IMG/VR virus record: IMGVR_UViG_3300024350_000252
Coordinates: 62,001 to 126,000 of that record
Strand: one strand, 5' to 3'
DNA length: 64,000 nt
Positions 1-57,300 of the stretch are shown here, piece by piece. The translations under genes were made by a program, and so were the position numbers. How positions within the stretch are numbered: position 1 is the stretch's first letter; every line of letters begins with the position of its first letter. The notes under the pieces are model-generated. The model searched no databases. It saw nothing but the letters and a program-made list of their open reading frames with translations, and had not been told where the DNA came from.

Positions 1-1
1 A

Positions 2-547
2 ATGGCCGACAACAATCTAGAAACACTAAGACGTGCTGTAGACGGTTTAGACGATCTTATACAGACAGGCGATAACTTGCCTGAATGGTGCCAGGAAAAG
101 ATCGCTGTAGCTAAAAATATGCTAGTAGCAGTGTGGGATTATATGGAATCAGAAGAAGCCACACATCAAGAAACAGAAGCCATGAACATGCCATTTGCTG
201 GCGCTGCTGTTGGGCATAAAGAAGGTCCAGCCGGTCAACTGAAAGGCCGCATGAAGCGTCCGGCTAGCGCAGGAGATCTAGTAGGCGGTGAGAGCATCGA
301 GAATGAAGCCAAGTATCATGGCAAGGAAGTTCCGCTAGGTAAAAAACTTCCCGGTGATGTTAAAAAATCTAAAGTCTATGTACGCGATCCAAAGACCGGC
401 AACATTAAAAAAGTAAACTTTGGTGATAAGAAAATGCGTATTAAGAAATCAAATCCTGCTCGTCGTAAGTCATTTAGAGCAAGACATAATTGCGCTAATC
501 CAGGACCACGCACTAAAGCTCGTTACTGGTCATGTAGGAGCTGGTAA
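2..547 (+). CDS. Two-domain hypothetical phage protein with basic C-terminal domain (RKSFRARHNC...ARYWSC), possibly 5'-truncated
   Basis: ORF track; C-terminal Lys/Arg-rich motif resembles a domain recurrent in aquatic T4-like phages; ATG at the window edge so the true start is uncertain. Confidence 0.75.
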   Translation: MADNNLETLRRAVDGLDDLIQTGDNLPEWCQEKIAVAKNMLVAVWDYMESEEATHQETEAMNMPFAGAAVGHKEGPAGQLKGRMKRPASAGDLVGGESIENEAKYHGKEVPLGKKLPGDVKKSKVYVRDPKTGNIKKVNFGDKKMRIKKSNPARRKSFRARHNCANPGPRTKARYWSCRSW

Positions 548-888
548 TGAGATTACAAGAGCTTTTTGCATCTCTTGAGAAAGAACAAGATCATAGACTA
601 GATCCTGAAATAAACTATCTAGCTGATCTTAAATTTTTCATCGACAACGATAATGATATCTTGTCTAAATTTTTCTTTCCTGCTATAAAACAACATAAAG
701 ACACTGCGTCACCAGACGACTATCATCACTATGTTGAACCCATTAAAAAGACCATAGTGATTTATTGTAAGAAACATGATCTCGATGATGTCAAAGATGA
801 CATATTCGGTGAAGATGATATTCTAGAACTAGCTAAGAGAATGGCTCAAGAACAACATAGATATATAGACCGAGGCGATTACGAATAA
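547..888 (+). CDS. Hypothetical protein, putative head-internal protein (N-terminus MRLQEL)
   Basis: TAATG-coupled to upstream gene; shares N-terminal motif with neighbours. Confidence 0.8.
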   Translation: MRLQELFASLEKEQDHRLDPEINYLADLKFFIDNDNDILSKFFFPAIKQHKDTASPDDYHHYVEPIKKTIVIYCKKHDLDDVKDDIFGEDDILELAKRMAQEQHRYIDRGDYE

Positions 889-1979
889 TGAGACTAAAGC
901 AGTTATGGGAAGATTCGGGAGATTCTATAGCATTCTGTTTTGGTAGAATGAATCCTCCCACGCGAGGGCATAAAGCTGTGTTTGATACACTAGCAAAAAC
1001 CAACAAGAACTATAGAATATTCATTAGCCCCGCACAAAAACCCTTAAAAAATAATCCATTAGACTTTGATACAAAAATCAAATTTATCAGAGTGATGTTT
1101 CCAGAACATGCCGCACATGTTTCAGCAGATCCTGGCCTAAACACTATCATGGCTATCGCTGCTAAACTGTACGATGAAGGTTACAGGAAAATCACATTCG
1201 TAGGTGGCAGTGATAGAGTTGGCACATTCAAAGAGCTACTAGACAAATATAATGGGGTAGAAATGCCCAACGGCATGTACAACTTTGAAGAAATAAATGT
1301 TGTTACTAGCGGAGACAGAGATCCCGATGACGAGGGACTAGCAGGAATTAGTGCTAGTGGCGCACGTGATGCTGCTAGAGCAGGAGATGTAGAAGCATTC
1401 ACTGAAATAACAGGTGCAGGCAAGTATGCCAAGCAATTATATGATGCTGTACGTTCGGGATTAAAAATCAAAGAAGAAGTTAATGAAGGTCCATTAGAAC
1501 TTAACACTAAAGATCCTGTTGTAGTTATATCTGATCCTAAGACAGGAAAGATACTAGATAAAATGAATCTGTCTGCCGCTGCTATAAAATATAGATTAGG
1601 TCCGCCAGAGAATGTCAAGCAACAATTAGCACATCAAAACTACACTACCATAGGAAACTATGTAGTACAGGCACCAATGACAGGACAAGCCGCAGAGGCA
1701 ATATTAGTAAATGATCCAGAGAAAGGTGCTCAGATCCGTCCAGACGGTGGTATGGGAACTTGGGATGAAAAATCTCTAGTATCTAACCTAAGCCGTAAAT
1801 TTGAATCTATACAAGAGTTTCTCAAATACGGTAACTACGAAAATATCGAATACGTATTATACAAAGCAGGTGCTATGGAATCTATGATAACAGCGTTAGC
1901 ACAATACAATAGATTCAAACAGAAACAAGGCAAACGCCCCATAGGCAGAGGCCGAGAAATAGATATGGGGAAATACTGA
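888..1979 (+). CDS. HIGH-superfamily nucleotidyltransferase (cytidylyltransferase/NMNAT-like) with two extra C-terminal domains
   Basis: FGRMNPPTRGH (HxGH-like motif), NPL motif, GGSDR, and ISASxxR (KMSKS-like) motif. Confidence 0.8.
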   Translation: MRLKQLWEDSGDSIAFCFGRMNPPTRGHKAVFDTLAKTNKNYRIFISPAQKPLKNNPLDFDTKIKFIRVMFPEHAAHVSADPGLNTIMAIAAKLYDEGYRKITFVGGSDRVGTFKELLDKYNGVEMPNGMYNFEEINVVTSGDRDPDDEGLAGISASGARDAARAGDVEAFTEITGAGKYAKQLYDAVRSGLKIKEEVNEGPLELNTKDPVVVISDPKTGKILDKMNLSAAAIKYRLGPPENVKQQLAHQNYTTIGNYVVQAPMTGQAAEAILVNDPEKGAQIRPDGGMGTWDEKSLVSNLSRKFESIQEFLKYGNYENIEYVLYKAGAMESMITALAQYNRFKQKQGKRPIGRGREIDMGKY

Positions 1980-2164
1980 TGCGTCTACGTGACTTATTTG
2001 AAAACGACTTACCTAAAAAGAGAGATCCTAATTGGAAAACTCTACAGGCCAAGCGTACTAGTGGTGCTGCTGGTGTTCATCGCGATAAGAAAAAAGAACA
2101 GAAGCAAGGCTACGAAAAACATAAAAGTAAATCTACAGAAGAATCTCAAGATGGAACTCAGTGA
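1979..2164 (+). CDS. Small basic hypothetical protein (MRLRDL; AGVHRDKKK...KHK)
   Basis: TGATG overlap with upstream stop; very Lys-rich; shared N-terminal motif. Confidence 0.7.
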   Translation: MRLRDLFENDLPKKRDPNWKTLQAKRTSGAAGVHRDKKKEQKQGYEKHKSKSTEESQDGTQ

Positions 2165-2354
2165 ATTAAAACGCCTAGCAGGCATAACAGAATTTAAGGG
2201 CTATCAGCCATACGGCGGTAGCAATATAAGTATTACTGGCAATGAAAAAGGCGAACTGATGAAAAAACACAATATCAAACCAGGAACACCTGAATGGTTC
2301 CAGTTATGGTTTAGCAAGCCTTATCTAACCGGTGAAAAACCTGTAGGAAAATAA
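2151..2354 (+). CDS. Small hypothetical protein (MELSELKRLAGI...PGTPEWFQLWF)
   Basis: Internal ATG at 2151 of track ORF 1989..2354 avoids a long overlap and gives the shared N-terminal motif. Confidence 0.7.
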   Translation: MELSELKRLAGITEFKGYQPYGGSNISITGNEKGELMKKHNIKPGTPEWFQLWFSKPYLTGEKPVGK

Positions 2355-2355
2355 A

Positions 2356-2700
2356 ATGCGTTGGAAAGAAATAACAGAAGGTTTGAAAAAAGAAAATACC
2401 ACAGTACATGGCGCTAAAACCTTTCCTGCGATCAAAGGATGGACTTATGATATGTATAGATGGGGTGTGGCTGCAGCTGGTAGCCCAGATCCACTACATG
2501 ACATGGCTAAAGAAAGCGATATCGCTAATAATCTAGTAGCTGTACAATTCAGTGATGGCGATAGAGAAATCATAGACCACAGCGCAAAAAGAATTGGTTT
2601 GAAAACACAAAAAATAGGTCCCGACAAAAGAAAAGAAAGCGAACACATCAACAATGCTAGTCCTGTAGCTAATGTAAAAAGAAATCGTTTCGGAGTTTAA
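2356..2700 (+). CDS. Hypothetical protein (MRWKEITE)
   Basis: ORF track; tight packing; shared N-terminal motif. Confidence 0.75.
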
Positions 2701-2701
2701 C

Positions 2702-3025
2702 ATGGTAGAAATCACTCCAGCAGCAAAAGTCAAAATACAAGATTTACTTTCAGAAGAAAATAATGAAAATCTAAAACTTCGTACCTTTGTACAAGGTGGA
2801 GGATGTAGTGGGTTTAGTTATGGGTTTACTTTTGATGATGTAAAAAACGATGATGATTTTTCTATAGATATCGGACGTTGGCAAGTGCTTATCGATTCTA
2901 TGAGCATGATGTATCTAGAAGGTGCCAGCATAGATTACAAAGAAGATATCATGGGCAGTCAATTTGTTATCAGCAATCCTAATGCGCAAAGCACATGTGG
3001 TTGCGGGAGCAGTTTTTCAGTATGA
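2702..3025 (+). CDS. erpA: A-type iron-sulfur cluster carrier (HesB/IscA/ErpA family)
   Basis: GGGCSGFSY and C-terminal [14 protein letters not shown] motifs with three conserved Cys. Confidence 0.93.
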
Positions 3026-3093
3026 ACGAGTATCCAGTATATCCAGAGGATGATGGTTATGACCGTCCGAGAAACCCTTATAGCCCTGTTTAA
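3022..3093 (+). CDS. Possible 23-aa Pro/Tyr-rich micropeptide ([23 protein letters not shown])
   Basis: ATG overlaps the erpA stop (ATGA); below the ORF-track cutoff. Confidence 0.4.
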
Positions 3094-3146
3094 AGACATA
3101 CTAGAAGGAATTATTAGATTTGGTTGTGGCCTAGCAGGAATAATTT

Positions 3147-4241
3147 ATGAGAGCAAGTGAATTAAAATTACCGCAGGGAATGGAAGTCTATGTTGACATG
3201 GACGGTGTCCTCGCAGATTTTTTCTCAGAATATGCCAAACTAGCCGGTATCGAATCAGGCAACTACAGAGACATTCCTCCAGCTAAAGCAGATCCAACGT
3301 TAAACAAGATGATAGGCACTGACTTCTTTTATAGATTGCCTAAGTTTCCTACCGCTGACAAACTACTAGATATCGTTGTCGATGCTGCTGGCAGCTATAA
3401 TATCTGTTCAAGCCCTCTCAGAGGCGATCACGAAAATTCCGGTGTACAAAAAAGACGCTGGATAGAAAAACATCTAGCAGTAAAACCTAAAAATATTTTT
3501 ATAGTAGCTAACAAAGCCAAGTACGCAGTCAATGCCAATGGCATGCCTAATGTCTTAATAGATGATAGAGGTAGCAACATTTCATCCTGGGAAGCAGCAG
3601 GCGGTATAGGTATCAAATATCAAGCTGACGAAGATACACTTAAAAAAGTATTAGATGGGTTGAAACGTGCCCGTCGTGTTGGTCAAGGAGAAGAGCCTCA
3701 CGAACCACAACAGCTAATCAGCAAAGATAGAGGCGGCAGCAATGCTATCGCTACTGCCAAAGACGAAAGTATCGAAGAATCAAGAAGATCTGGGTTTTAT
3801 TCTGTACACAAGTTCTTAACAAAATACAATAGATTCGACCCTATAGGCAGTCCTACTAAGTTTTCCGGAAGTGCTGTCGGCAAGACTTTGGACTATCTCA
3901 AACAGACTAACATGCCAGTAAAGGTAACTATCAATGATCATAAAGGTGAATTTGATAGTGTGATTATCGAACCGGGCGATCACGTAAAACGTGCTGTCGA
4001 AAGACTGGGTTTCATAGATGACAGTCCGGATGTAGCATTAGACGTTAAAGAAGTTAGCAAGCAAGGTGTGGCGGAAAACTTTGCTGATGGCAAAGGACCA
4101 GGTCGCCCAGGTGATAGCCAACGCCATGGAATACCTAAAAAAGCCACTATGGCTGAATTAGAAAAAGCCTCACACGCTAAAGGACGTAAAGGACAGCTAG
4201 CCCGTTGGCAAATAAATATGAGACGGGGTAGAAAGAAATGA
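3147..4241 (+). CDS. HAD-family 5'(3')-deoxyribonucleotidase (NT5C-like) fused to two further domains, ending in a basic ENFADGK...RRGRKK module
   Basis: YVDMDGVL (DxDGV) and LIDDR motifs, W...GGIGI; additional ~190 aa C-terminal. Confidence 0.85.
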   Translation: MRASELKLPQGMEVYVDMDGVLADFFSEYAKLAGIESGNYRDIPPAKADPTLNKMIGTDFFYRLPKFPTADKLLDIVVDAAGSYNICSSPLRGDHENSGVQKRRWIEKHLAVKPKNIFIVANKAKYAVNANGMPNVLIDDRGSNISSWEAAGGIGIKYQADEDTLKKVLDGLKRARRVGQGEEPHEPQQLISKDRGGSNAIATAKDESIEESRRSGFYSVHKFLTKYNRFDPIGSPTKFSGSAVGKTLDYLKQTNMPVKVTINDHKGEFDSVIIEPGDHVKRAVERLGFIDDSPDVALDVKEVSKQGVAENFADGKGPGRPGDSQRHGIPKKATMAELEKASHAKGRKGQLARWQINMRRGRKK

Positions 4242-4423
4242 GATTTGGCGAGCTAGTAAATGATTATAGATATTATGGAGCTAGGATCAAGGTAAAACTT
4301 AATGGATCTACTTCTTACATTGATACAGCAGTTAACGCTAAAAACAGAGAAATGGCTAGGAGATTGTTTAAAGTAATGTACGGGCCCAGCTCTATGGTAA
4401 CTAATGTACGAGAAATCAAATGA
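4238..4423 (+). CDS. Small hypothetical protein (MRFGEL)
   Basis: ATGA coupling on both sides; shared N-terminal motif. Confidence 0.7.
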   Translation: MRFGELVNDYRYYGARIKVKLNGSTSYIDTAVNAKNREMARRLFKVMYGPSSMVTNVREIK

Positions 4424-4611
4424 AATTAGCAGAACTACTAGCAAAACCATCAAAAATCAAGGAATCTGCTACAGCAGGTGCTACTAGCGCAGGAAATATA
4501 GCGTCTGTAGCCAACCCTAACATAGCTAGATCTAAGAAAAAAGTAAAAACAGCTAATGCCCTTGATACCAAGGACGTAAGCATATTCGGCGGTCCGGCTT
4601 TCAAAAGATAA
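4420..4611 (+). CDS. Small hypothetical protein (MKLAEL...ESATAGATSAGNIASV)
   Basis: ATGA coupling; shared N-terminal motif. Confidence 0.7.
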   Translation: MKLAELLAKPSKIKESATAGATSAGNIASVANPNIARSKKKVKTANALDTKDVSIFGGPAFKR

Positions 4612-4614
4612 ATA
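4608..4614 (+). promoter_or_regulatory. Putative late promoter (ATAAATA)
   Basis: Resembles T4 late consensus TATAAATA; at the start of an intergenic gap upstream of 4674. Confidence 0.5.
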
Positions 4615-4673: not shown

Positions 4674-5909
4674 ATGGATTTTAAAGCACTCATCCAAAAA
4701 ATAGACAGTATTGATATTCCAGCGACGCCTGTAGCAGCACCAAAGCTAGCTGATCCCGTCGTACTAGAAGAAAGCATGGCTATCAAGGTTCTAGCAGGAG
4801 TTACTCCGCTAACAGAATCAATTCTAGCTGAAAAGAAAGCCAAGCCCGATTTCCTAGATATGGATAAAGATGGCAACAAGAAAGAGCCAATGAAAAAGGC
4901 AGCTAAAGACGCTAAGGTCAAAGAAGCTTCCGAACACAAAGACAAGGATTCATTTGATAAGAGTGCTAAACCAGGTGATACTGTCAAAACTTCTAAGGGC
5001 ACATTGACCAAGACCAAGACTGGTGTCAAGCATGAGCGCAAATATACAGAAGGTATGGAAAGCACAGCAGAAATGGCTCATCACCATGCTTCAGAATATG
5101 CCAAGCATCACAAAGCAGGAAACCTAGAGATGTGTATGCATCACAAAGAATCCTGTGAAAAATGCGGTGGTAAGATTTCACACGGTGAAATGGGTGAATG
5201 CTACCATCAACACGCAGGCATGAACCAAGGTCAACCATACAATGTACAAGAAGGTGTTATCGGCGCAGGAGTAGGCGCTGGCCTAGGAGCTCTAGTCGGT
5301 GGACCAGTTGGTGCTGTCGTAGGTGGCGGTTTGGGTCAAGCTGTAACCAATTCTATGACCAACGAAACTAAAAAGTGTACCTGTGAAACTGTAGGCAAGA
5401 CCAAATGCTCAGTACATGGTTCGATGAAAGAAGCTTCTACAGGAGATTATTCTGCCAAGAAAGCTCGCGCTGGTAAAGACATTGGTAAGCCAGGTAAGAA
5501 CTTTTCTAAGATTGCTAAGTCAGCAGGTGGTGGAGAAAAAGGCAAGAAGATTGCCGGCGCTGTGTTAAAGAAACAACGTGCCAACGAAGCTGCCAAACCA
5601 GATTATATCGATCTAGACAAAGATGGTAACAAGAAAGAGCCAATGAAGAAGGCAGCTAAGGATGCTAAAACCAAGAAGCCTATGAAAGAATCAGTAGAAA
5701 CAAAACTGACCTTTGTCAATGCTCTTGCTATCGTTAAAGAAAGCAATTACACAAAACAGATCGATCCTAAAGATGAAGCACTGTGGGATTGGGCTCAACG
5801 TGTAGCAAAAAACAAATTCACTGAATCAGCAAAAGCAGATGCGTTTGCCGCTATGACCTATGAAAGAATGGGCGGTGATTGGGACGTCTGCGATACTATT
5901 ACAGAATAA
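4674..5909 (+). CDS. Modular Lys-rich protein, probable head-internal/core protein
   Basis: Two DxDxDG-containing repeats, His/Cys-rich segment, glycine zipper, many hydrophobic-x-E linkers. Confidence 0.75.
   Translation: MDFKALIQKIDSIDIPATPVAAPKLADPVVLEESMAIKVLAGVTPLTESILAEKKAKPDFLDMDKDGNKKEPMKKAAKDAKVKEASEHKDKDSFDKSAKPGDTVKTSKGTLTKTKTGVKHERKYTEGMESTAEMAHHHASEYAKHHKAGNLEMCMHHKESCEKCGGKISHGEMGECYHQHAGMNQGQPYNVQEGVIGAGVGAGLGALVGGPVGAVVGGGLGQAVTNSMTNETKKCTCETVGKTKCSVHGSMKEASTGDYSAKKARAGKDIGKPGKNFSKIAKSAGGGEKGKKIAGAVLKKQRANEAAKPDYIDLDKDGNKKEPMKKAAKDAKTKKPMKESVETKLTFVNALAIVKESNYTKQIDPKDEALWDWAQRVAKNKFTESAKADAFAAMTYERMGGDWDVCDTITE
4839..5669 (+). repeat. Two diverged 78-nt intragenic repeats (4839-4916 and 5592-5669) encoding AKPD(F/Y)(L/I)D(M/L)DKDGNKKEPMKKAAKDAK
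   Basis: Direct comparison of DNA and protein sequence. Confidence 0.9.
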
Positions 5910-5920
5910 GGAAATAAAAG

Positions 5921-6535
5921 ATGGCTAGTCTAGAACAAATCCAAGCTGCTTTCCCACATGCTAATCCTAACAGAATAGCTGAACTATATGATGGATTCAT
6001 GGAAGCATTTGAATTGTTTGAAATTAACACACCTTCAAGACAAGCTGCTTTCTTAGCGCAATGCGCACATGAAAGTGGCAACTTTAATGCTATGGTAGAA
6101 AATCTAAATTACTCAGCCGATGGTTTACAAAAGATTTTCCATAAGTATTTTCCAGATTCAGAAATAGCAAGTCAATACGCTCGCAAACCAGAAATGATTG
6201 CCAACAGAGTGTATGCTAACAGAATGGGCAACGGTGACGAAGCCAGCGGAGATGGTTTCCGCTATCGTGGTCGTGGACTGATCCAAGTCACAGGCAAGAA
6301 CAACTACAGAGCCTGTGGTGATGCTCTTGGTGCTGATTTATTATCAGAACCAGATCTATTAGAAACATCCCCAGGCGCAGTACTATCAGCTGGTTGGTTC
6401 TGGGCTGCTAATGGGTTGAATGCCTACGCAGATGCCGGCGACATCCTAACAATGACCAAACGTATCAATGGCGGCACTATTGGTCTAGAAGATCGCAAAA
6501 AGCATTACGAACACGCGATGCACGTTTTGGCATAA
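5921..6535 (+). CDS. Glycoside hydrolase family 19 endolysin
   Basis: AFLAQCAHESG, ENLNY, YANRMGNG, YRGRGLIQVTG, INGG motifs. Confidence 0.93.
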   Translation: MASLEQIQAAFPHANPNRIAELYDGFMEAFELFEINTPSRQAAFLAQCAHESGNFNAMVENLNYSADGLQKIFHKYFPDSEIASQYARKPEMIANRVYANRMGNGDEASGDGFRYRGRGLIQVTGKNNYRACGDALGADLLSEPDLLETSPGAVLSAGWFWAANGLNAYADAGDILTMTKRINGGTIGLEDRKKHYEHAMHVLA

Positions 6536-45310: not shown

Positions 45311-45317
45311 TATTTAT
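45311..45317 (-). promoter_or_regulatory. Putative late promoter (ATAAATA)
   Basis: Only 4 nt before the 45306 ATG. Confidence 0.5.
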
Positions 45318-48300
45318 TATGGCAAATTTGTAGTCTTCTGCTGTAGGAACGTCACTATCGAAGTTTTGCTATTGCTTAATCCTTCTCCGGTAGTAGCTGA
45401 ACTGTTACCAACATCATACCATAGCTTGCCGGTTCTCTTAACCACTGTGATCCTAGTTGCTGCTTCTACAGCCGAAGTTAATCTTATATATGGCGTTGAT
45501 CCATCTACAGAAAATTCAGCTTCTACTAGCACATCGCCCGCAGGGCTATGTGAACCTACAGTTTGATCGTATACGTAGACAGGATCTTTGTTCAATCTGC
45601 GTCCAGCCACAAATACTTCGATAGTATCGCATGGTCCGTACTCTTCAGGTATACTGTCTACCGGCCATTCTTTCCTGTATCCTGTTCCATCTACAGCAGA
45701 TTTAGCAGGAATAAAAGTTAATGGCCCAATAAGCAAAGAAGTTCCGTCTGATACAAAATCTTCTTTTTCTTGAGAATCCTTGTAAGGAATAGCTTCTGTA
45801 TAACCTGTGATTACTACTTCAGTTCCCGCACTAAACAATGGCGTTACAGAAGTACCAAACATACCTCTTCTTAATCCCGTTAGACGATTACCATCTATAG
45901 CTAGATATTGTATTTTTTCTCCGCCTATAGTCACTATACCCGGCTGATCAAATTTGGGTACAGGAAGTGCTGTAGCATCTGTCAGTGTCATAGATTCGTC
46001 ATAGTAATTTAAATTTTCTACCAATTTGATGTTAGACAATGAGTATCTGCTGTAATAATTTTTGTTCAACACATCTTTAAATATTTCAAACGATACCGGT
46101 TCACGATAAATCATATCAGATCCGCTGATTATTTCCACTACATCAGTAGAGGTTGTAATAAATGAAGGATTGAATATAATTTCGTTTCTATTTCTTGATA
46201 GATAGTAATCTATATCCTGTGTAGCTCTTTCACCATTTACATATACCCATACATAAGAAACTCCTAAAACAGGTTTTTCTAGAGAATAAGCTAATTCGCC
46301 ACCTTTAAAGATGTCTCTGGTTAGATCCATCGTAGTATACTGTTCAAACCACTTGACGTTTAAAACATCACCTAATTGTAGATTTAAATCTGTCCTAAAA
46401 ACAATATTGTTATTTTTGATTTCATAGTTGCTATTAGAATAATCTTCTATCCTAATAATATCTCCTATGTCATATTTTCCAAACAGAGTCACTGTGTTGT
46501 CTTCAGCTGTGAACCCATAATCGATACCAAATATCAATAAATTGTCATTTACAAAAACTTTAACTTGGCTATCGATAATATCTCCTGGGTTTCTAAAAGG
46601 ATCTAAACCTATCTTTATAGAATCGTTACCTGAATAGATTTCTATAACAGTATCAACAGTGGTTAGTAAGTTACCGTTTCTTTCTACAAGAACGTTACTT
46701 GTAGGTGATCCTCCTAGATTGATAAATGATTCTAAAGGATATATTCTTTGTACGATATCAGTTACTGTTATAGTTTGATCATTGACTTTGATCAAAGGAG
46801 AATATGATCCCGATTCAGCAGATAGAACAACGATAGAAATCTTTCTGTTAACTTCCGGAGGATTACCAAACTCTACTAGAGTTTGATCTAGATCATTTAC
46901 CTGTCCTTTGCTGTTAACGAATCCGGCATCAACGATCTGTCCATCAACAGTAGCATAGATAGATCCAGTTTCAAAATATGATGCTCCTGTTAGATAATAT
47001 CTTGTTAGTCCGTCTGCTATAAATTCTTTATAGTCAAGAATTTCTGTACCACCTAACGCCATGGATACAACTTCTATTGTAGAACCAGCAGGTGGTAAAA
47101 CTCCGACGAATCTAACTTGATTAGTTTCAAAAGATATTGTATAATCTAGGCCGTTATCTTTTTTGACTTTATCGACATAAACTGTAACAGATTTTCTCTC
47201 AGTTACTTTCTGACCTATTTCATAGAGATCTGTCTGACCGTCTCCAAAATAAATTCTAGTTAATAGCGCAGGAGCTCCTGCTCTATCAGTATGGAACACT
47301 TTGATACTAAGTGTATCTAAAACCTGTCCCGGAACATTTTCCTCTGGAGCAGGTACTTGTTCTGGACTGATAAATTTTTGTCCGTCTAATACTATCTCAG
47401 AAGCAGTTTTACCTGTCGCTGTAGAGTATGCTCCACCTATATTTGTTAGATCCCCGCCAGATATAGCCGTATCGATATTTCTACCTACTAGTGCTACAGT
47501 ACCATCACTTTCGATCGGTCTGAATATCAGTGTATCATCTTTATCGATTTGTACTCCCGGAGGAATCGTTACAGCTATAGTAGATCCATCACCAACAAAT
47601 GTCTGCATCACAGCATGTTCGGGAGCTTCTTTCAAGCCGTTTATCTGTATCGTGCTTCCATCATAATAGTCAAAGAAAGGATCGTCTAATCTGACAGAAT
47701 TGTATTCTAATTTCTTTCTTAGATAGATTGTTATTTCTTTACCTAGAGGTGGCGGTTCAGGTAGATAGAATGTTCTATTAACACCATCAGCTGCTACATA
47801 AAAATCAGTGTTCATGTCGCCGGAGCTGTCCCATCCTTCTAATCCCCATGGCACAGCATCCCAACCAGCACCTACATCAAACATTGATCCTTGTACTATA
47901 ACTCCGCCAAAGTCTATGCCGGTGACTAGCTGTGAATAATCGCTGATTATTTCGCCATCTATTGTGTTCTTTTCTACACCTAACATACCAGATGTTGGTT
48001 GATAATACTTGTCTATCCTATTAAGAGCATCAAGTATTTCGTCATTCTTTTCGTAATGAACTGTAACTGTAGCACCCTGTGGCGGAGCTGCGTTCAATAA
48101 TAATTGACCAGTAAGAACTTCCGTTCCAGAAATATTTGTCTTGAAAATCTTGATCAAATATTGGCTGTTTAACAACTTGGCACCGTCTGTGCCTGCTGCT
48201 GTATTAGGATGTTTTAAAAATACAGCAATCTTAGATTTGTCTGTAGTGGGTGGATACTTTAGTGTGAAAGTATTTTTAGTACCAGGACATACAAATGATT

Positions 48301-51300
48301 CTGTTTCTAAGAAATTGTTTCCTAGATTTTTAAACTTCGGAGTCTTTGAATATCTATCAAACTTGATAGACATATCAAATGTACGAGCTTTAGATTGTCC
48401 TATGATGGCTACAGCTTTAGCAGAATTTTCTATCACTGTACCAACACCGCCAACTAATGTTACTGTAGGAGCAGAAGTATATCCTGATCCATGCTTGATC
48501 ATTCTTATATGTGTTACTACGCCGCTAGAAACAAATGCTTGTGCTTCTGCTCCATTACCACCACCGCCTTCGATGACTACCTTAGGTACGCTGGTATAGT
48601 TCTTTCCGCTGTATGTCAATACGATGTCTTTGACTACAAAAGCATGATTGTCTTTCCAGAATTTCCAAGGGTACTGATCGATTTCCAATCTTGTAGAATC
48701 AACAGGAACTATGCTTTGTGAATTAATATCAAAGACTGGAGGTAAATCAAAATCACTAATCGGTGAAGATGCTAGCTCTTGCCCTAAGTACCTACTGGTA
48801 TATTTTCTAATTTTGGTTCTATAAGGTTTAACTTCTTCGATATATTTCTGATAGCTAGAAAGATTATCGCTCTTATAGTTGATCCTATTGCTAAAATAAC
48901 CAACGTTGTGTGTTGCGTTCAAGAAACTGGTCTTGAATGCCCAATCGACATAAAGTTGTTCGCTGAATATGTAATGTATAGAAACAAAGAACAACTTGTT
49001 CCATTCGTTACTAAGTTCATCGATGAATATATTTTCTTTTACCGCTTTTAGAATATTTCTAAACTCGATAGAGAACGAAGTATCATATTTGTTACTATCA
49101 TAGCTTTGAGTTAAATCGTATCCTGTAGATTCCGCAGCAGTATTGTAGAACTTATTAACTATCTGGATAGTTCCATTTTTACGACCAACTAAACGATATT
49201 TGTTTTGTAAATCAGTAGCTATCGGATCGACTGTTTCAAAAACTGCCCAACCGCCAGAACCATATTCATCCACTCTTACTAGATCTCCTATCTCTACAGT
49301 CAGACCTGATTCTCTATAAAGTCCAGGAATAGTATATTTGATTCTAGAAGTATTGCTAAATCCCGACTTCCAATAGTCGACAGGAATCCAGAATTTAGTG
49401 GTATCATATGCTTGTGTTGCTGTCTTATAAAATGTTTCTGTTTTATCATCCCAACTATAGATAGCCCAATAGCCGTTTGAGTTCACATCGCTTTCGATCA
49501 ATACAGAAAACGGTCTAACATTTAGTCTAGCATTGATATACTTGGTGCCGCTATTTTCAATGATGACACCAGTCACCACGCCTAATTTATTAATAACTGT
49601 TTTAATCTTTGCGCCGGTGCCTGACCCATCTATTTCGACATAAGGTGGTACTCTATATCCTCGACCACCATCTATAACATCAACAGAAGTTATTTTTCCG
49701 TTAGCTATATTAGCTGACAACAAAGCCGGTTTTATTTTAGCAGTAGCTATAGTAGATAATTCTTTATAGCTGGCAAAAGATTGATCATACAGATTTAAAT
49801 TAGATTTAGGTAATGGTGCTGTTAAATTTAAATATTCATAAGAAATAGAATCTGCCAATGGATAACGAGAAAGTATATTGTTAATATAATCTACTGTTAT
49901 CTGTACCGCTTTATTTCTGTTAATAAACATAGACTGTCTAGGTCTATTGGCTATTCCGTATTTTGATTTTTCTGGAAGATCTTTATCAGGAACTGATCTA
50001 CCTAGAATATCTTCACCAACAAGACTGTCGATCCACTTTCTTTCTATATCTTCAACAGGATATTCATCAGAACCTTCTGTCAACAGAGTATATTCGTTGT
50101 GGACTAGATTTATGTTTTTATCAGTTTTATAGAATTGTATATTCAATAAAAATTCATCAGTATTGATAGAACCTTGTAAGTTATACAAAGAAATTTTATC
50201 AACATCAGTTATAGCAGCAAACGGAATTCCTGCTGTCGTTGGATTAGCAATGTAATTTGCTATAACTCCTGCGCTATTTGTTTTAGTAGAATTATTAGGC
50301 AGAGTATTTTTGCTTCTTACCCAATAATAGTAAACATTATATAATACTTCGCCGGTTATTGAGTCTAGTTTTTGCTTGTAAGAATAGTTTGAATCATCAG
50401 GATACAATGGTGTCCCGCTGATACCTTCTTCAAAACCAGCAGTAGTGCCAGTCATAGCTGCCCACTCGCTAGGCCTATAAATGGTTTCTACCCATTCGTA
50501 AACATCGATGCTAGCACCATATGCTAGTGAACCCCAATTAGCTGTCTTATAAACAAAATCATTTTGTTCATAATCAAGATACTTTGCGGTAGATGTTCTC
50601 CACCATATCTTACCAACATTATCATCCATCCATGCTTGGCCGGCGTCGATAGCATTATCAACAGTACCAGTAGAATAAACAGCAGGATCATAAGATGTTT
50701 TATAATCTATATCTTGATCAGCTATAGAAAGTATCTTTCCTTTAAATGGATCTATTATATCAAGGTCAGCAATCTTGCGATTATTAACAGCATCGTATAT
50801 GGCTAGATTTTTTAATTTGTCTATATCTATGCCGTTTGTTTGCTGCCTAATCACTGTCCAAGGTTTTACTCCTGCTTTCTTAGTAAATTTTTGTATCCTA
50901 CCAATCCTAGTAGTAGCAAAAGCAGGATCTAATGATAGATATTTTGGTGATCCAACAATGATCGAATCATTGGATGCTGAAAGAGACTTACCAAAGTCTT
51001 CATTGGTGTTAAGGCCTTCATCAAATATTTCTGAAAGAACAAACTTACCTACATACTTGTCAAACACATAGACTTTACCAGTTTTTCCTTGTGAATCTTT
51101 GAAGTTGGTAACAAAACGATCAAATCTAGTATCATTAGCATCAAATGTTGTAGTTTTATAACTTTCAGCACCTTCAGCTGAAATAGCTATAGTTTGATTA
51201 TCAGGAGTGATACAGATATTTGAACCGAATCTTTCGTTAGGATCTAGTTGACCGCTATCTAGTTTTTGTATCAGTTTATATGTTCCGTTTTTGTTTTCAA

Positions 51301-54300
51301 ATACGAATGTAGCTCCCTGGTCTACTCCTTTGAAGTTAGAAGCAGGAGCAGTAACAAACATATTTGTGGATTCAGAACTTAATAGAATCTTGTAACCAAA
51401 TTGATCGCCTGCGGAGATTTCTGTACTGTCAGTAAGATAAGAATTAACATTAACAGAATCTATATGTTGAGAAAGTTTATATGTGTTATTGCTATCTCTA
51501 TCATAGATAAACACCGCACCAGTCCTTGGCTGCTCTTCAGGATATTCTATAGACCAAATCGAAGGATTACCTTCCGGTATAGTTCCTTTATCAGAATCTG
51601 CTGCCAATGTATAGTAGCTGTCGTTTCTCCTAACAGTATCTCCTTTGAGATATATTTGATAGGATTTCCAGACACCTTTATACGAATCAAATGTCAGGCT
51701 ATCTGCGTTAGGTGCTCCAATTATTAACTTGCTGCCATCGGCATTAAAACTTAATGAATATCCATACGATGAACCTATTTTAATATTTTCTACATCATCA
51801 GTCGGTTTGATACCAGTTTGTATAGTAGATCCGTCATCTGGGGTAGCTGCTGTTACTGGCAGCATACCTGTATTCAATGAATCAATAGCTTCCCAATAGA
51901 CTGTAGAATCACCAGTAATAACTCCGGGAGTTTCTGTGTTAGGTGATATATCTGATAGAGCTTTGTAATAATTGTTTGTGTGCCAAACAACTGTACCTGC
52001 CGGATAGAATTTGGTGCTGTCAAATATTCCAACAAAACCTTCATCTTGGAAATGCGTCCATTCGATTCCGTTAAATTTATAAAGATATACTCTACCAGTA
52101 TCGTCTAGAGATCCCGGAGCACCAACTGCCATATAATAAGTTTCAGGAACAGCACCAATCGAAGTTCCTAAAATCCTAATTTGATCTCCTACATTATAGC
52201 GTAAACCTTTAACACCAACGGTAGCTGAATATGAACCTTCTGCCCTCGTCAATGTAAAGATAGCACCATTACCCGGCTCGCTGATATCTTCACCAACAAC
52301 ATCGTTATATTGTGCTTCGCCGGAAGATGCTATGCCACTCCAAGAAATTCCTGGTACCGCTGTACCAAAGAAACTAAAATCAGATATAGAAGTATCTGTA
52401 GCTGATGTTACAGCATCGACTCTTATAGTTAAATCATTAGCTGGTGAATATCCGCCTAGTTCAGTTCCGGGAATAGTTATTATTGTACCTGGAGTATAAG
52501 TAACTCGCAACCCTGTAGTAATTGCTCTATCTCTCCAAGGCAGAGCATTTGAAGCAAAATTAGATCCAGTAACTGGTTCCCAGAAATCAGTATCTGTAGG
52601 TAAGATAGGATTATGTGTTTCGTAATACTGTTCATCAGGTGGTGCTATCCCAGTAACTATAGCAGTCACTTTAAAATAGCCTACAGGTAGTACTGGATTA
52701 TATTGATAATAAACTATATCACCTGGATAATATGTAGTGTTGATATCCCAGGCACCTCGTTCAATTCTAGTATCTCTAATACAGGCATAGTATCTACCGT
52801 TATAACTAACAATGCTTCTTGCTGTATATCCCTGACCACTGTTTGTCAAATTAACATCAACATACAAATCCCTAAGTTTTGAAATTTGAAATACCGCTTG
52901 TTCAGATACGAGATTTGATTCTATACCGGTCACATTATTATATGTTTCCGATCCTAAAATTTCACCTAAAGAATTTACTGCGTTGACTGTTACAATAAGA
53001 TCATTTGTAGGTGTTACTCCACCAAGGCGACTACCAACTATCTTGATCCTGTCACCGACCGCGTATCTTGTGCCACCGTTTCTAACTGTTACAACATATC
53101 TATTCAATGCTCTGTTGATGTCAAACGAAGCATTAGAACCGGGTTCGCTGACATCTATACCACTGATGTTTTCAAATATAGCATTATTAAGACCACTGAC
53201 TCCCGATGCTGTTACTCCGAGGATTCCTCCTTCGGCATCTACAGTTGTGACCGTCAATGTAACATCACCACTAGTTCCTTCAATTCCAGCTACTTTAGCT
53301 ATAGATATACCAGAAGCAAAGTATTCACCGTGTCCCGGGCGAGGACTTATAATGGTATCTCGTAAAACATATTGTCCTTCGGAATATTCAAAGATATCGA
53401 TAGCACCTTGATTTCTATAACCTTGATTTATATCATAGATAGATTTGCCTAATGGGTTGGCTTTATGAATTACAGCTGGTTCCCAATCTTGAGAATTAAG
53501 ATTTATCGTACTACCATCACCGTAAATAGATCTAACCGCTCTCCATAGTTTGCCAGCATAAAGAACAGTGTCGTCTTGCTGATAGGTAGCATTTGGATCA
53601 AATGTTTCTCTATAATTACTAGGCACATAAGAAACGTTAGGTGAGCCTATCATCAACCAGCGACCATCTTCGCTAGTTGTCATTACTGTAGCATAAGAAC
53701 CCAGATATGTGCTTTGAAGACCAGAATTAGGTACTAATACCTGTAACGGTATCAAGCCACCCTGGCCCTGAGAATATACTATAACTGCCGACTCTCTAGT
53801 AACATCACCAGAAGTAACAACTGCGCCAGGGTTACCAACAATAGTGTTTCCTCTGCTGGCTAGATAGATCACACTGGCTCCTGTACCTGTCGGGAAAGCG
53901 ATACCGTATTCGGATATCTGTGTAGGATTATATTGTTTCTGTCTATTCAATACTTGCCAATATCCATCTCCACTATCATCTAACCATATCTTAGATCCTA
54001 CCGGTAATAAAGCAATTTTCTTAGATGTAAGATAAGATTGATCATCAATCCTTACTGTTTCAAATGTAGAGATATAACAGAAACTACTTTGATCTATAAC
54101 AGGTTCTTTAGTAGTACCTGCTACAGCTATGATAATCGTCTTAGGATTAACTCCGGCTACCTGATAAAAACCTGTTAGGTTTTCTATGTTAGTCAATCCA
54201 ATAATATCGCCTACTTTAAAATTGTGTACAATATTAGTGATTAACGAAACAAATCCTGTTTCGACTGCTACTGCTTTACCTACTAAGATTGATGTTATAG

Positions 54301-57300
54301 TATATCTATATACATCCCAGCCTGTTGGTAGGGAGGTCAACCATACTAACGAACCTTCTTTAAATATTGTTATATCAAGACTGTATAATTCGTCAAGTGT
54401 AGTAACTGTAAAATCGACGTCGGCAGGATTTACATACCCCGCAGACATATTGTTTATAGGATAGTATTTTGTAGGAAATTTAAATTTCCTAGATCCTATC
54501 TTATAATCAGAGTCTTTTACCAATACAGATGTTTGATACTGCTTAATATCTATTCCTGTTGTATCTAATAACACAGGTTGCGGATTGATATTGATATTTT
54601 CTTTTTTGATCGAAACTTCTATTTCATTAGACTGATCAATACCACCTAGTCTACCTACAAGAAATGCCCATTCTTCATCAAGAACGACAGCATCTGCTTC
54701 GATAGCACTCACCTTGTCAAATATCTTAGTGATAGAATTTGCTGTACCTTTTTCTCTTATGAAGCCTTGGTATAATCTAAATTGAGTTACTTCATCTTCT
54801 GCTATATCCTGTAGGTATTCTCTTTGTTGATACCCAATAGAGTGTTGTGCTAACTTTTTCTGTTCGTTATCGATACCGATATAGTCTAGTTCGAAATAAT
54901 CTTCTATTTGATTGATTTTATAATCAAAATTAGATACTAGACCTTTCTGAGGAAGATTATCTAATCTTTCCCAATTATTAGAATTAAATTCAACGGAACC
55001 TTTTTGAAACTTCAAGCTGGTATAGTAAAACTGTTTGTATTGTACTATATCTCCTAATCTATAATCAGTAAACGGTTTCCAAGTTTCTATATTAACATCG
55101 TCATAGATGAATCCCGGACTTGTGTAGTCACCATCCCAGTCGGTGGTACGGAAACCTGCGACTTTGATTCTTTCTTGTCGATATCCTGGTGCCTTATCAA
55201 ATATAACATCACCAAACACAGTTCTATCATTGAATACAACTACGTGTTCTTTGGTCACATAATTGATTTTAGCAAAATAAATTCCGTCTGTGCTATCAAG
55301 AGGTGTTAGTATAAACTTGTTAAATGTCCTATAAACCTGTATGTCCTTAGGTTGTATTTTTGTCCCGTCACTTCTTTGTATATTATAATCATAAAAATTA
55401 TCAAGTAGATTATCAGCGACTCGACCAACTTTTTCTATAGTGATCGCAGACGCAGACGGGCTTAGTGAAATGATAGAACCATTGGCCCAATTATGAGTAG
55501 TCCAGAACATGAATTCTTTGCAACTAGTTTCCCAATCATTGGGTACTTGTAAATCTGTATTAAAAGATTCAAATACCATTCCCTGGTCTTTGAGATATTC
55601 TCCATAACCAAGAAGGAAATCTACTACAGACTGTAAATCAGCGAATACAGTATTATATGGCAGCACAGCCGGCTGATACTTAGAAAATTTACTTCTGTTA
55701 ATAGCTGTAATCGATCCAACTATGGGAACCGACAGTATAGATACCCAAAGAGAACTTTCAAAATTTTCTGAGCTAGTATGAGCCTGTCTAGATCTGTAAA
55801 ATTTACTTTGATATCTAATCAATGTTCCTGATGGATAGTATTGATTAGCAGTCCACTCTACAAAAGTTTCGCTAACACCGCCTACAGAAAATACAGGATC
55901 ACTAGCTGTAGTCAATGGATGATAATATGTAAAAGCAGAAACTAATGTGTCATAGCCTGTGAGTTTCCAACCCGAAGATGTTTTTTCGATAATTACAGCC
56001 GAATAAGAAACAGTTTCTACTGGTGTGCTAACATTAAAAAATATCTCATAATCTTCAGAAGGAACAAAAATTCCTGAAGTTTTAGATTGAGGACTCTTGC
56101 TATCTAACAAATACTTCTGTTGATTTTTATCTACGAACCCACCTATCTTGTTAGATAATTTTACTTTAAAATTATCAGAATTAAATTTTGAAGCTAATTC
56201 TACAGATGCTACAGAATTAGATTTTAGATAATCAACGACATAATTTACGAGACCTTTTGGTTTTGTAACATCTAGTGTTGATTGATAAACTTCATCTAAA
56301 CTAAGGAATTTTCCTGTAGACGTAGACACCATTTGATCCATATCATTTTTAGTCAACAGCGTTCTGTCAAAATTCAATGATACAGTCTGTAATGGTCGTA
56401 ATAAAATAATTGCTTGTAATAGAGCGAAAGGATATCTGCCACTTTTTCTCCAAGCAGATTCAGCCGGACCTATGTCGCCAAATACAAATGCTTCGGCAGG
56501 CTGTATGATAGCATAATTTATAATCGATCCAGATGACACAGGATCTAATAATCTACCCTCATCGTCAACTGGAAGATAAGAAAGCAAGTTTGGTCTCTTG
56601 AATCTAATATGAGTACCTGCTCTATTACCTTGTCTAATTACACCGTCTCTTATATCTTCCCACAACAATAAGTTTCCACTAGTGTACGGTGCTGGACCAT
56701 ACTCTTCTTCCCACCATGTTGGTTTTTCACTAAAACCTAGCATTTCCCATGGTCGAGTATGAGGAGCATCAGTATCATATAGATAGATATAAATGCCTCG
56801 CCAGTATGCTGGCATTTTTTCAGTTCGAGTTATATCTGTGGCTTTAGAAAAGCTATAGGTGTACTGATTTTCGCTTTCAAAATAGTTATTAGCATAAGGA
56901 TCTATTCCTAATGGATTAGCCCATCTTAAAAATTCTTGATTTAATACACTGTCTAATTGTGCTTTAGTGAATTCACCAGTCTTTCCATAACCGCCCAAAA
57001 GATTATCAAGATCTAAGAAATCAGGATTGTATTGAATCTTGATATTGTTATAAATTCTTTTTTCTAATTCTAAAAGTAGTTCATCTCTGAAATCATCATA
57101 AGCTACTATAATACTACCGTCATGCCCTCTTATCACTCTAGTAGGTTCTAGATATGTGTCGTCGAGATAAATCTCAGGTGTAAATTTTTTATATAATCCT
57201 AATTTAGTAGGAGTCATCGGCATAAAATTAAATGCCGTTGTATAATATTCTTTTATCTGTATCTGATCATTTTCTACTAAGTCTATCAGTAAACGAACAA

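What the first reader, a model, noticed from the sequence alone, without database searches (positions are those of the whole stretch)
547..4611. Shared N-terminal motif on eight clustered genes: candidate capsid-targeting signal
Seen: eight genes in this 4-kb run begin MRLQEL (547), MRLKQL (888), MRLRDL (1979), MELSEL (2151), MRWKEI (2356), MRASEL (3147), MRFGEL (4238) and MKLAEL (4420), i.e. M-[RKE]-hydrophobic-x-[EQD]-[LI]. Several continue to an L/I-x-E site (LWE, LFE, ITE). The mature parts are unrelated to each other, and I did not see the motif on the other genes in the window. Known: T4 internal proteins carry a short capsid-targeting sequence (MKTYQEFIAE type) removed by the gp21 prohead protease after L/I-x-E. 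Inference: this phage packages and injects a set of proteins, including enzymes, using its own targeting code.
Basis: partly seen in the sequence, partly recalled or inferred. Interest (0 to 1): 0.75.

Follow-up and report, generated by a model that had tools for sequence, protein, structure and literature searches.

The report
T4-style capsid-targeting leaders on clustered genes
Eight neighbouring genes of an uncultured giant T4-like phage start with a short tag that closely resembles the tag phage T4 uses to load proteins into its head, so they are probably head-packaged, possibly injected, proteins, two of them enzymes.

Summary
All eight genes start with M-[RKE]-x-x-[EQD]-[LI]. Only 14 such ATG-anchored ORFs exist in the 238-kb genome, and eight of them form this run.

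The conservation is in the protein, not the DNA, because synonymous codons differ.

The phage is T4-related. It encodes a gp21-type prohead protease, a gp22-like scaffold, a gp23-like capsid protein and a gp55 homologue.

Across 80 related contigs the tag sharpens to M-[KR]-[AIL]-x-E-[FIL]-[ILV]-(x)-E. That is T4's MKTYQEFIAE minus one residue, including the [L/I]-x-E protease site. It sits on about 12% of called genes near the polymerase, in at least 25 unrelated families.

Supporting evidence:
- A late-promoter motif (ATAAATA) precedes the tagged transcription units.
- Six of the eight products have pI above 9.2 (genome median 5.7).
- Gene 8 copies the capsid protein's own maturation cut (IKE|SATAGATSAGN against LSE|SATAGATSAGN).
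- The phage 121Q orthologue of the nucleotidyltransferase lacks the tag.

Limits: only three of eight carry the [LI]-x-E site at residues 6-8, and two more carry it further in. No virion proteomics exists.

Verdict: probably a T4-type capsid-targeting propeptide system in a distant lineage with a much larger cargo set. Packaging and injection are inferred, not shown.

The parts
1..547 (+). 3' part of a 382-aa gene (genome 61399-62547) that heads the run. A late-promoter-like ATAAATA lies 30 nt upstream of its start at genome 61363, outside the window. It begins MKTSDI, only a loose match to the tag.
547..888 (+). Gene 1, 113 aa, acidic (pI 4.9). The tag is MRLQELF. In seven orthologues M1 R2 L3 E5 F7 are invariant, followed by a variable linker and then a conserved five-helix bundle. 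There is no [LI]-x-E at residues 6-9.
888..1979 (+). Gene 2, 363 aa, a cytidylyltransferase-type nucleotidyltransferase (HxGH motif). Full tag MRLKQLWE|D lies 12 residues before the first Rossmann strand.
1979..2164 (+). Gene 3, 61 aa, basic (pI 9.8). Full tag MRLRDLFE|N, followed by a DUF7230-like GAAGVHRDKKK module.
2151..2354 (+). Gene 4, 67 aa. It starts MELSELKRLAGITE|F, which is conserved in relatives as ME[IL]x[ED]LKRLAGI[NT]EF. The ITE site is at residues 12-14.
2356..2700 (+). Gene 5, 114 aa, basic. Full tag MRWKEITE|G. It is a distant paralogue of a 126-aa ORF at genome 236012 that starts MRAHEFITE.
2702..3025 (+). IscA/HesB-type Fe-S protein without the tag. It serves as a negative control inside the cluster.
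3147..4241 (+). Gene 6, 364 aa. An NT5C-type 5'(3')-deoxyribonucleotidase (HAD fold) with a basic C-terminal ENFADGK module. It has a partial tag, MRASELKLPQG, and no conserved cleavage site.
4212..4218 (+). ATAAATA late-promoter-like motif, 19 nt before the ATG of gene 7.
4238..4423 (+). Gene 7, 61 aa, basic (pI 10.2). Partial tag MRFGEL, no cleavage site near the start. Ten orthologues were found in relatives.
4420..4611 (+). Gene 8, 63 aa, basic (pI 10.4). It has the tag MKLAEL and then IKE|SATAGATSAGNIASV. This copies the maturation cut and N-arm of the phage's own major capsid protein (LSE|SATAGATSAGNVATL).
4608..4614 (+). ATAAATA late-promoter-like motif ahead of the untagged 411-aa gene at 4674-5909. 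It marks the right-hand end of the tagged run.

Best explanation
The shared N-terminus is a T4-type capsid-targeting propeptide.

Shown:
- The window belongs to a giant T4-related phage that encodes a gp21-type prohead protease, a gp22-like scaffold, a gp23-like capsid protein and a gp55-like late sigma factor.
- In this phage and its uncultured relatives, many otherwise unrelated proteins start with M-[KR]-[AIL]-x-E-[FIL]-[ILV]-(x)-E.
- These genes lie behind late-promoter-like motifs.

Inferred mechanism:
- The proteins are made late in infection.
- The two hydrophobic positions of the tag (3 and 6, matching T4's 4 and 7) bind the assembling scaffold core, so the proteins are enclosed in the prohead.
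- The protease then cuts after the Glu of [L/I]-x-E, freeing the mostly basic mature proteins inside the head. From there they may enter the host with the DNA.

Of the eight genes, 888, 1979 and 2356 carry the full tag. Genes 2151 and 4420 carry the tag with a cleavage site further in. Genes 547, 3147 and 4238 carry only the targeting half. In T4 that half is still packaged but is not processed.
For: - Protease, scaffold and capsid genes are present. A gp55 homologue is present.
- In relatives with about 80% polymerase identity, 193 of 1598 called genes start with the core motif, all on the polymerase strand. 118 have the full form. They fall into about 25 or more N-terminal-domain families.
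- The full motif occurs at 7.1% of N-termini against 0.05% of internal positions. The [LIV](x)E extension follows the core in 61% of N-terminal cases against 5.8% of internal ones.
- T4 literature gives the CTS as MKTYQEFIAE, with targeting at residues 4 and 7 and processing at residues 8 and 10. An Asp at position 10 blocks cleavage but not targeting (PMC9026906; bioRxiv 10.1101/2021.01.19.427310).
- Positive control: the T4-spaced pattern hits T4 three times and the reversed control never. Two of the three hits are ipII and ipIII.
- ATAAATA is 25-fold enriched upstream of genes, mostly structural ones. It precedes the head of this run (genome 61363), gene 7, and the two other full-tag ORFs in the genome (136214, 236012).
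- In relatives ATAAATA precedes 55% of full-tag genes, counting whole operons, against 13% of other genes (Fisher 2e-24).
- Third codon positions in the tag vary freely.
- Six of the eight products have pI above 9.2, against a genome median of 5.7.
- Gene 8 matches the capsid protein across its maturation cut (72% identity over 18 residues, E 2e-6). That cut aligns with T4 gp23 FLTE65|A66.
- The tag is an add-on. Pfam and PHROG domains start after it, and it is disordered in the model of gene 1. The 121Q orthologue of the nucleotidyltransferase starts four residues before the first strand, and a cyanophage ligase-like pair exists with and without it.
- The scaffold N-terminus (MLDIVKQLFE) resembles the tag, as T4 gp22's (MLKEQLIAE) resembles T4's tag.
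Against: - There are no proteomic or N-terminal sequencing data. The phage is uncultured.
- In this window only 3 of 8 tags are complete. The nucleotidase's apparent GME site is not conserved in its orthologues.
- All 120 listed homologues (the best of 1,246 hits) of the nucleotidyltransferase keep the xLxxLFE start. That could instead mean the segment matters to the enzyme itself.
- A tag on about 12% of genes near the polymerase is a very large cargo set.
- The cultured giant relatives 121Q and Atu_ph07 show no excess of the pattern, so no studied virion can be used as a proxy.
- Cyanophage scaffold proteins do not resemble cyanophage tags, so the scaffold-mimic idea is not general.
- Protease-substrate docking gave no answer.
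- The RNA-library data cannot show timing or transcript ends.
Confidence: 0.65

Rival explanations
1. The tag is a recognition or degradation signal for another phage machine, for example the ClpA/B-like two-AAA+ protein encoded just upstream of the run. Tagged proteins would be unfolded, remodelled or timed for destruction rather than packaged.
For: A 781-aa ATP-dependent-protease-like AAA+ gene (phrog_4871) lies at genome 58018-60363, next to the run. It appears to recur there in relatives: long ORFs 9-10 kb upstream of the polymerase in L038, L040, L069 and L082 may be the same gene, though they were not scanned against any family. N-terminal tags are a known way to address Clp unfoldases (general knowledge, not tested here).
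Against: The tag ends in the gp21 cleavage motif and equals the T4 CTS, yet T4 has no such AAA+ protein. The late-promoter link and the copy of the capsid maturation site in gene 8 point to the prohead. Similar tags occur in cyanophage loci, but whether those genomes encode the AAA+ protein was not checked.
Confidence: 0.1
2. The tagged proteins enter the prohead but serve only as scaffold or core filler. They would be degraded and expelled at maturation, like T4 gp22, gp67 and gp68, so nothing is delivered to the host.
For: The scaffold N-terminus carries a tag-like motif. Many tagged proteins are low-complexity and modular. T4 core proteins are cut into peptides (PMC9026906).
Against: Folded enzymes (a nucleotidyltransferase, an NT5C nucleotidase and, in relatives, a ligase-like and a HAD-like protein) are unlikely to be mere filler. 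T4 proteins with a single N-terminal cut (the IPs and Alt) are retained and injected.
Confidence: 0.12
3. The motif reflects shared ancestry or a constraint on translation starts (A-rich second codon, translational coupling) and has no targeting role.
For: The third base of codon 2 is almost always A. The genes are translationally coupled. Orthologues conserve the tag, as expected from descent alone.
Against: Synonymous positions of codons 3-9 vary freely, and there is no conserved upstream RNA motif. The tag sits on unrelated folds. The coupled in-cluster IscA gene lacks it. The Glu at position 8 or 9 with [LIV] two residues before it is enriched about tenfold at N-termini over internal sites, which a start-codon effect does not explain.
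Confidence: 0.06

Closest known systems
T4 capsid-targeting sequence of internal proteins IPII and IPIII (MKTYQEFIAE)
   Same: Both are N-terminal tags of about 10 residues on otherwise unrelated, mostly basic proteins. Both have two hydrophobic residues three apart, a central Glu, and end in [L/I]-x-E, the gp21 site. The genes are clustered and lie next to a lysis enzyme gene (T4: e-ipIII-ipII; here the endolysin at 5921). Both genomes encode a gp21-type protease.
   Different: The tag here is one residue shorter (8-9 aa). The mature parts show no similarity to T4 IPs. The cargo set is far larger and includes enzymes. Nothing has been shown experimentally.
T4 Alt (packaged ADP-ribosyltransferase with a short cleaved propeptide)
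   Same: It is a precedent for a folded enzyme carried in a T4-type head and injected. A propeptide of 7 residues is removed by gp21 (PMC9026906).
   Different: The enzymes here have other activities (a nucleotidyltransferase and a 5'-nucleotidase). The nucleotidase lacks a conserved cleavage site.
T4 gp61.1 (uncharacterised 54-aa protein)
   Same: Like gene 8, it is a small basic protein with a CTS-like start (MKTFKEFIKE), followed by a copy of its own phage's capsid-protein maturation site and N-arm. gp61.1 residues 2-38 align with gp23 residues 57-93 (46% identity, E 6e-9).
   Different: It belongs to a different PHROG (1823 against 17311). The two proteins show no direct similarity. Each tracks its own capsid protein.
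Ejection-protein propeptides of phiKZ and SPN3US giant phages
   Same: In both, many head-internal proteins are matured by a gp21-related protease that cuts after Glu (PMC5694885 and PMC9026906).
   Different: Those sites are not [LI]-x-E (recalled as S/A/G-x-E; the exact motif was not checked here). Their propeptides are long and not a shared short N-terminal tag.

Membership tests
T4-type capsid-targeting sequence (CTS) propeptide | Short tag at the extreme N-terminus of otherwise unrelated proteins | tested here: met
   Eight genes here and about 25 or more families in relatives carry it. The full motif is 136-fold commoner at N-termini than at internal positions.
T4-type capsid-targeting sequence (CTS) propeptide | Sequence like MKTYQEFIAE, with hydrophobic targeting residues three apart (T4 positions 4 and 7) | tested here: met
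   The clade consensus is M-[KR]-[AIL]-x-E-[FIL]-[ILV]-(x)-E, for example MRAYEFILE, which is the T4 tag minus one residue. The T4 residue roles come from PMC9026906.
T4-type capsid-targeting sequence (CTS) propeptide | Tag ends in the gp21 cleavage motif [L/I]-x-E | tested here: inconclusive
   Three of 8 genes have it at residues 6-8, two of 8 at residues 12-15, and three of 8 lack it. In relatives 61% of core matches have it.
T4-type capsid-targeting sequence (CTS) propeptide | Genome encodes a gp21-type prohead protease and a scaffold core | tested here: met
   Peptidase_S77 scores 88 bits at genome 147506-147946. PHROG scans give a head maturation protease, a gp22-position protein and the major head protein.
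T4-type capsid-targeting sequence (CTS) propeptide | Made while proheads assemble (late expression) | tested here: inconclusive
   Late-promoter-like ATAAATA precedes the run, gene 7 and the other full-tag ORFs, and is enriched on tagged genes in relatives. A gp55 homologue is present. Actual timing was not measured, and the RNA-library contigs say nothing about it.
T4-type capsid-targeting sequence (CTS) propeptide | Proteins are present in virions and clipped after the Glu | not testable with these tools
   The phage is uncultured, and cultured relatives lack the tag.
T4-type capsid-targeting sequence (CTS) propeptide | The tag alone carries a foreign protein into the head | not testable with these tools
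   This needs a fusion experiment.
T4 internal proteins IPI/IPII/IPIII (as protein families) | Mature part homologous to a T4 IP | tested here: not met
   PHROG and Pfam scans of all eight proteins gave no internal-protein family.
Sec/Tat signal peptide | Hydrophobic core of about 10 or more residues after a basic N-region | tested here: not met
   The tags contain Glu or Asp at position 5 and usually at position 8 or 9, and have no hydrophobic stretch.

The most novel reading that the evidence does not exclude
A widespread uncultured lineage of giant T4-related freshwater phages has expanded the T4 capsid-targeting system into a general cargo-loading code. The code is carried by dozens of protein families, including nucleotide-metabolism and ligase-like enzymes, so these phages would inject a large enzyme and effector payload. 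The code itself may derive from the capsid protein's maturation site or the scaffold N-terminus. Small capsid-mimic proteins (gene 8 here, gp61.1 in T4) would then be a conserved but undescribed class that acts as decoy substrates or regulators of the prohead protease.
Probability: 0.35. Interest if true: 0.8.

Novelty: new variant of a known kind. Interest (0 to 1): 0.62.

Why it matters
If the tag works as in T4, it gives a sequence-only way to list the injected payload of uncultured giant phages. The payload would include enzymes that could act before any phage gene is expressed, for example against nucleotide- or NAD-based host defences.

It would extend a mechanism known only from T-even coliphages to a distant and abundant environmental lineage.

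The capsid-site mimicry seen here and in T4 gp61.1 also suggests where the targeting code came from, and this can be tested in T4 itself.

Tried and rejected
- Nucleotide search against cultured phages found no close relative.
- Docking of the protease with gene 8's product returned 'no answer'. It is not evidence either way.
- The 9-residue pattern shows no excess in 121Q, Atu_ph07 or the two cyanophage records, so their virion data cannot stand in for this phage.
- Fold searches of the gene 1 model against the PDB and viral libraries matched only uncharacterised viral proteins. A protein atlas search for gene 5 gave nothing usable.
- River metatranscriptome contigs hold the stretch, but they carry no strand, timing or end information, and DNA carry-over cannot be excluded.
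- Cyanophage scaffold N-termini do not resemble cyanophage tags, so the scaffold-mimic idea was kept only for T4 and this clade.
- A DNA-level explanation (repeat, promoter cassette or regulator site spanning the start codons) was rejected, because synonymous positions vary and no upstream motif is shared.
- A signal-peptide reading was rejected on composition.
- A literature search found no description of gp61.1 or of CTS-like tags outside T-even phages. The library is not exhaustive.


Full report
**Observation.** They are packed head to tail, with overlapping stop and start codons. The strict motif M-[RKE]-x-x-[EQD]-[LI] on an ATG with at least 40 codons downstream occurs 14 times in the 238,047-bp genome, and eight of those are this run. 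With F, M or V also allowed at position 6 and ORFs from 30 aa, shuffled genomes give about 6 matches against 20 in the real genome. Eight or more matches in eleven consecutive genes has a probability of about 1e-11 at the background rate. The conserved residues use different codons in different genes, so the selection is on the peptide.

**What the genome is.** The window is bases 62001-126000 of an IMG/VR virus record, estimated about 67% complete. The record encodes:
- a gp21-type prohead protease (Peptidase_S77, 88 bits), a gp22-position protein and a gp23-type major head protein;
- a gp43 polymerase;
- a gp55 homologue.

Its nearest cultured relatives are the giant Rak2/121Q-like phages, Atu_ph07 and Phosso, at 44-50% polymerase identity. 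There is no close nucleotide match among cultured phages.

**Relatives sharpen the motif.**
- Eighty IMG/VR loci with 78-100% (mostly about 80%) polymerase identity were fetched.
- Upstream of the polymerase they carry the same tag, both on orthologues of the window's genes and on many other proteins.
- Of 1598 called genes, 193 start with the core motif, all on the polymerase strand, and 118 have a longer form.
- The consensus is M-[KR]-[AIL]-x-E-[FIL]-[ILV]-(x)-E, with examples such as MRAHEFVTE, MRAYEFILE, MKATEFIIE and MKIKELLE.
- These fall into about 25 or more families by their N-terminal domains. They include the nucleotidyltransferase, the NT5C nucleotidase, a ligase-like protein with a KWDG motif, a HAD-like protein and many small basic modular proteins.
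- The full motif is found at 7.1% of N-termini against 0.05% of internal positions. The [LIV](x)E extension follows the core in 61% of N-terminal cases against 5.8% internally.

**Comparison with T4.**
- The T4 tag is MKTYQEFIAE. Targeting depends mainly on residues 4 and 7 and processing on residues 8 and 10. An Asp at position 10 blocks cleavage but not targeting (PMC9026906).
- The clade consensus is this sequence with one residue removed. It keeps the hydrophobic pair three apart, the central Glu and the closing [I/L]-x-E.
- As a positive control, the T4-spaced pattern hits the T4 genome three times and its reversed control never. The hits are ipII, ipIII and the uncharacterised gp61.1.
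- In T4 the ip genes lie beside the lysozyme gene. Here the run ends one gene before the endolysin.

**Expression context.**
- ATAAATA, the core of the T4 late promoter, is 25-fold enriched upstream of genes in this genome. Its 40 copies almost all point at nearby gene starts, mostly structural genes.
- One copy lies 30 nt before the 382-aa gene that heads the run (genome 61363). Another lies 19 nt before gene 7 (window 4212-4218), and one lies at the right end of the run (window 4608-4614).
- The only other full-tag ORFs in the genome also have a copy just upstream. They are a 417-aa ORF starting MRINDILIE at 136214 and a 126-aa ORF starting MRAHEFITE at 236012.
- In relatives the motif precedes 28% of full-tag genes directly and 55% when whole operons are counted. 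The figures for other genes are 7% and 13% (Fisher 2e-10 and 2e-24).

**The tag is an add-on.**
- Pfam and PHROG domains begin after it: residue 10-12 in the nucleotidyltransferase and residue 12-14 in the nucleotidase.
- In gene 1's family the tag residues are invariant, the next 8-16 residues vary, and a conserved domain follows.
- In the AlphaFold model of gene 1, residues 1-20 are low-confidence and the fold starts at residue 24.
- The 121Q orthologue of the nucleotidyltransferase starts four residues before the first strand. One cyanophage orthologue has a different N-terminus, and another has a T4-spaced tag at an unannotated GTG start.
- A cyanophage ligase-like pair exists with and without the tag.
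- The in-cluster IscA gene lacks it.
- Against this, all 120 listed homologues (the best of 1,246 hits) of the nucleotidyltransferase keep an xLxxLFE start.

**Link to the capsid.** Gene 8 reads MKLAELLAKPSKIKE|SATAGATSAGNIASV. The phage's capsid protein reads ...YLSE|SATAGATSAGNVATL, which is 72% identical over 18 residues (E 2e-6). That capsid site aligns with T4 gp23 FLTE65|AEIGG, the known maturation cut. T4 gp61.1 does the same with T4 gp23, at 46% identity over 37 residues (E 6e-9). The two small proteins are not similar to each other and sit in different PHROGs. The scaffold N-terminus here (MLDIVKQLFE, conserved in relatives) resembles the tag, as T4 gp22's MLKEQLIAE resembles T4's tag. 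Cyanophage scaffolds do not show this.

**Cargo properties.** Six of the eight products have pI above 9.2, the nucleotidyltransferase has pI 8.3, and gene 1 is acidic. The genome median is 5.7. Within this genome the mature parts are unrelated, apart from the gene 5 paralogue and the gene 8 capsid copy.

**Weak points.**
- Only genes 888, 1979 and 2356 have the full tag. Genes 2151 and 4420 have the cleavage site further in. Genes 547, 3147 and 4238 have only the first half.
- The nucleotidase's GME is not conserved in its orthologues.
- No virion data exist, and 121Q and Atu_ph07 lack the pattern.
- Docking gave no answer.
- RNA-library contigs show only that the stretch is present in river metatranscriptomes.

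**Verdict.** The most likely reading (about 0.65) is a T4-type capsid-targeting propeptide system in a distant giant-phage lineage. The tag is one residue shorter than T4's and the cargo set is greatly enlarged. Packaging, clipping and injection remain inferred.

Noticed in passing
genome 58018-60363 (just left of the window; L004:8018-10360): A 781-aa ClpA/B-like protein with two AAA+ domains (phrog_4871, 'ATP-dependent protease') lies next to the tagged run. It appears to recur at the same place in relatives.
   Followed up: partly
genome 873, 60993, 145587, 202007, 225358(-), 236000: The late-promoter-like ATAAATA is followed by the ATG after only 5-6 nt. This leaves no room for a ribosome-binding site, so some late mRNAs may be leaderless.
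   Followed up: no
window 4674-5909; genome 211054-211572; genome 5562-5981: A second shared N-terminus occurs on three genes (MDFKALIQKIDSID, MNFNELYKKIADLD, MSIMDFIHKIEQVS). The 411-aa protein at 4674 also holds the module KPD[FY][LI]D[ML]DKDGNKKEPMKKAAKDAK twice, plus a glycine zipper.
   Followed up: no
T4 record AF158101: 18966-19130 (-) (L090): T4 gp61.1 (54 aa, uncharacterised) starts with a CTS-like MKTFKEFIKE. It then copies T4 gp23 residues 57-93, including the E65|A66 maturation cut (E 6e-9). No description was found in the searched literature.
   Followed up: partly
L002 (S-8S55) and L003 (C48C1), Kyanoviridae: Several annotated CDS around the cyanophage cytidylyltransferase start MKTFKQF, MLSFKQFVSE, MITFKKYLEE or MMLDFKNFITE, which are T4-spaced CTS-like tags. 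The C48C1 enzyme probably starts at a GTG 60 nt upstream of its annotated ATG.
   Followed up: partly
window 3087 and 3177 (L098:3887, 3977): River metatranscriptome contigs break at these two points. A co-occurring strain carries a different nucleotidase tag (MKAADLHLPE), so there is a mosaic junction right at the tag.
   Followed up: no
window 2702-3025: An IscA/HesB-type iron-sulfur assembly gene sits inside the probably late, tagged run but has no tag.
   Followed up: no
genome 145598-145846 (L005:2598-2843): An 82-aa gene at the gp67 position, between the portal and protease genes, starts MKLYEFFYF. This is a tag-like N-terminus, and ATAAATA lies 5 nt upstream.
   Followed up: no
window 45317-60142 (-): A single 4941-aa ORF is followed by a 1169-aa ORF, within a block of minus-strand genes that look like tail-fibre genes.
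   Followed up: no
window 4080-4238 (C-terminus of the nucleotidase) and relatives' small genes: The basic ENFADGK...RHGIPKK module at the nucleotidase C-terminus occurs in relatives as a stand-alone small tagged protein (MRAKEFVIE-NFADGK...). The cargo proteins therefore look like assemblies of shuffled short modules.
   Followed up: partly
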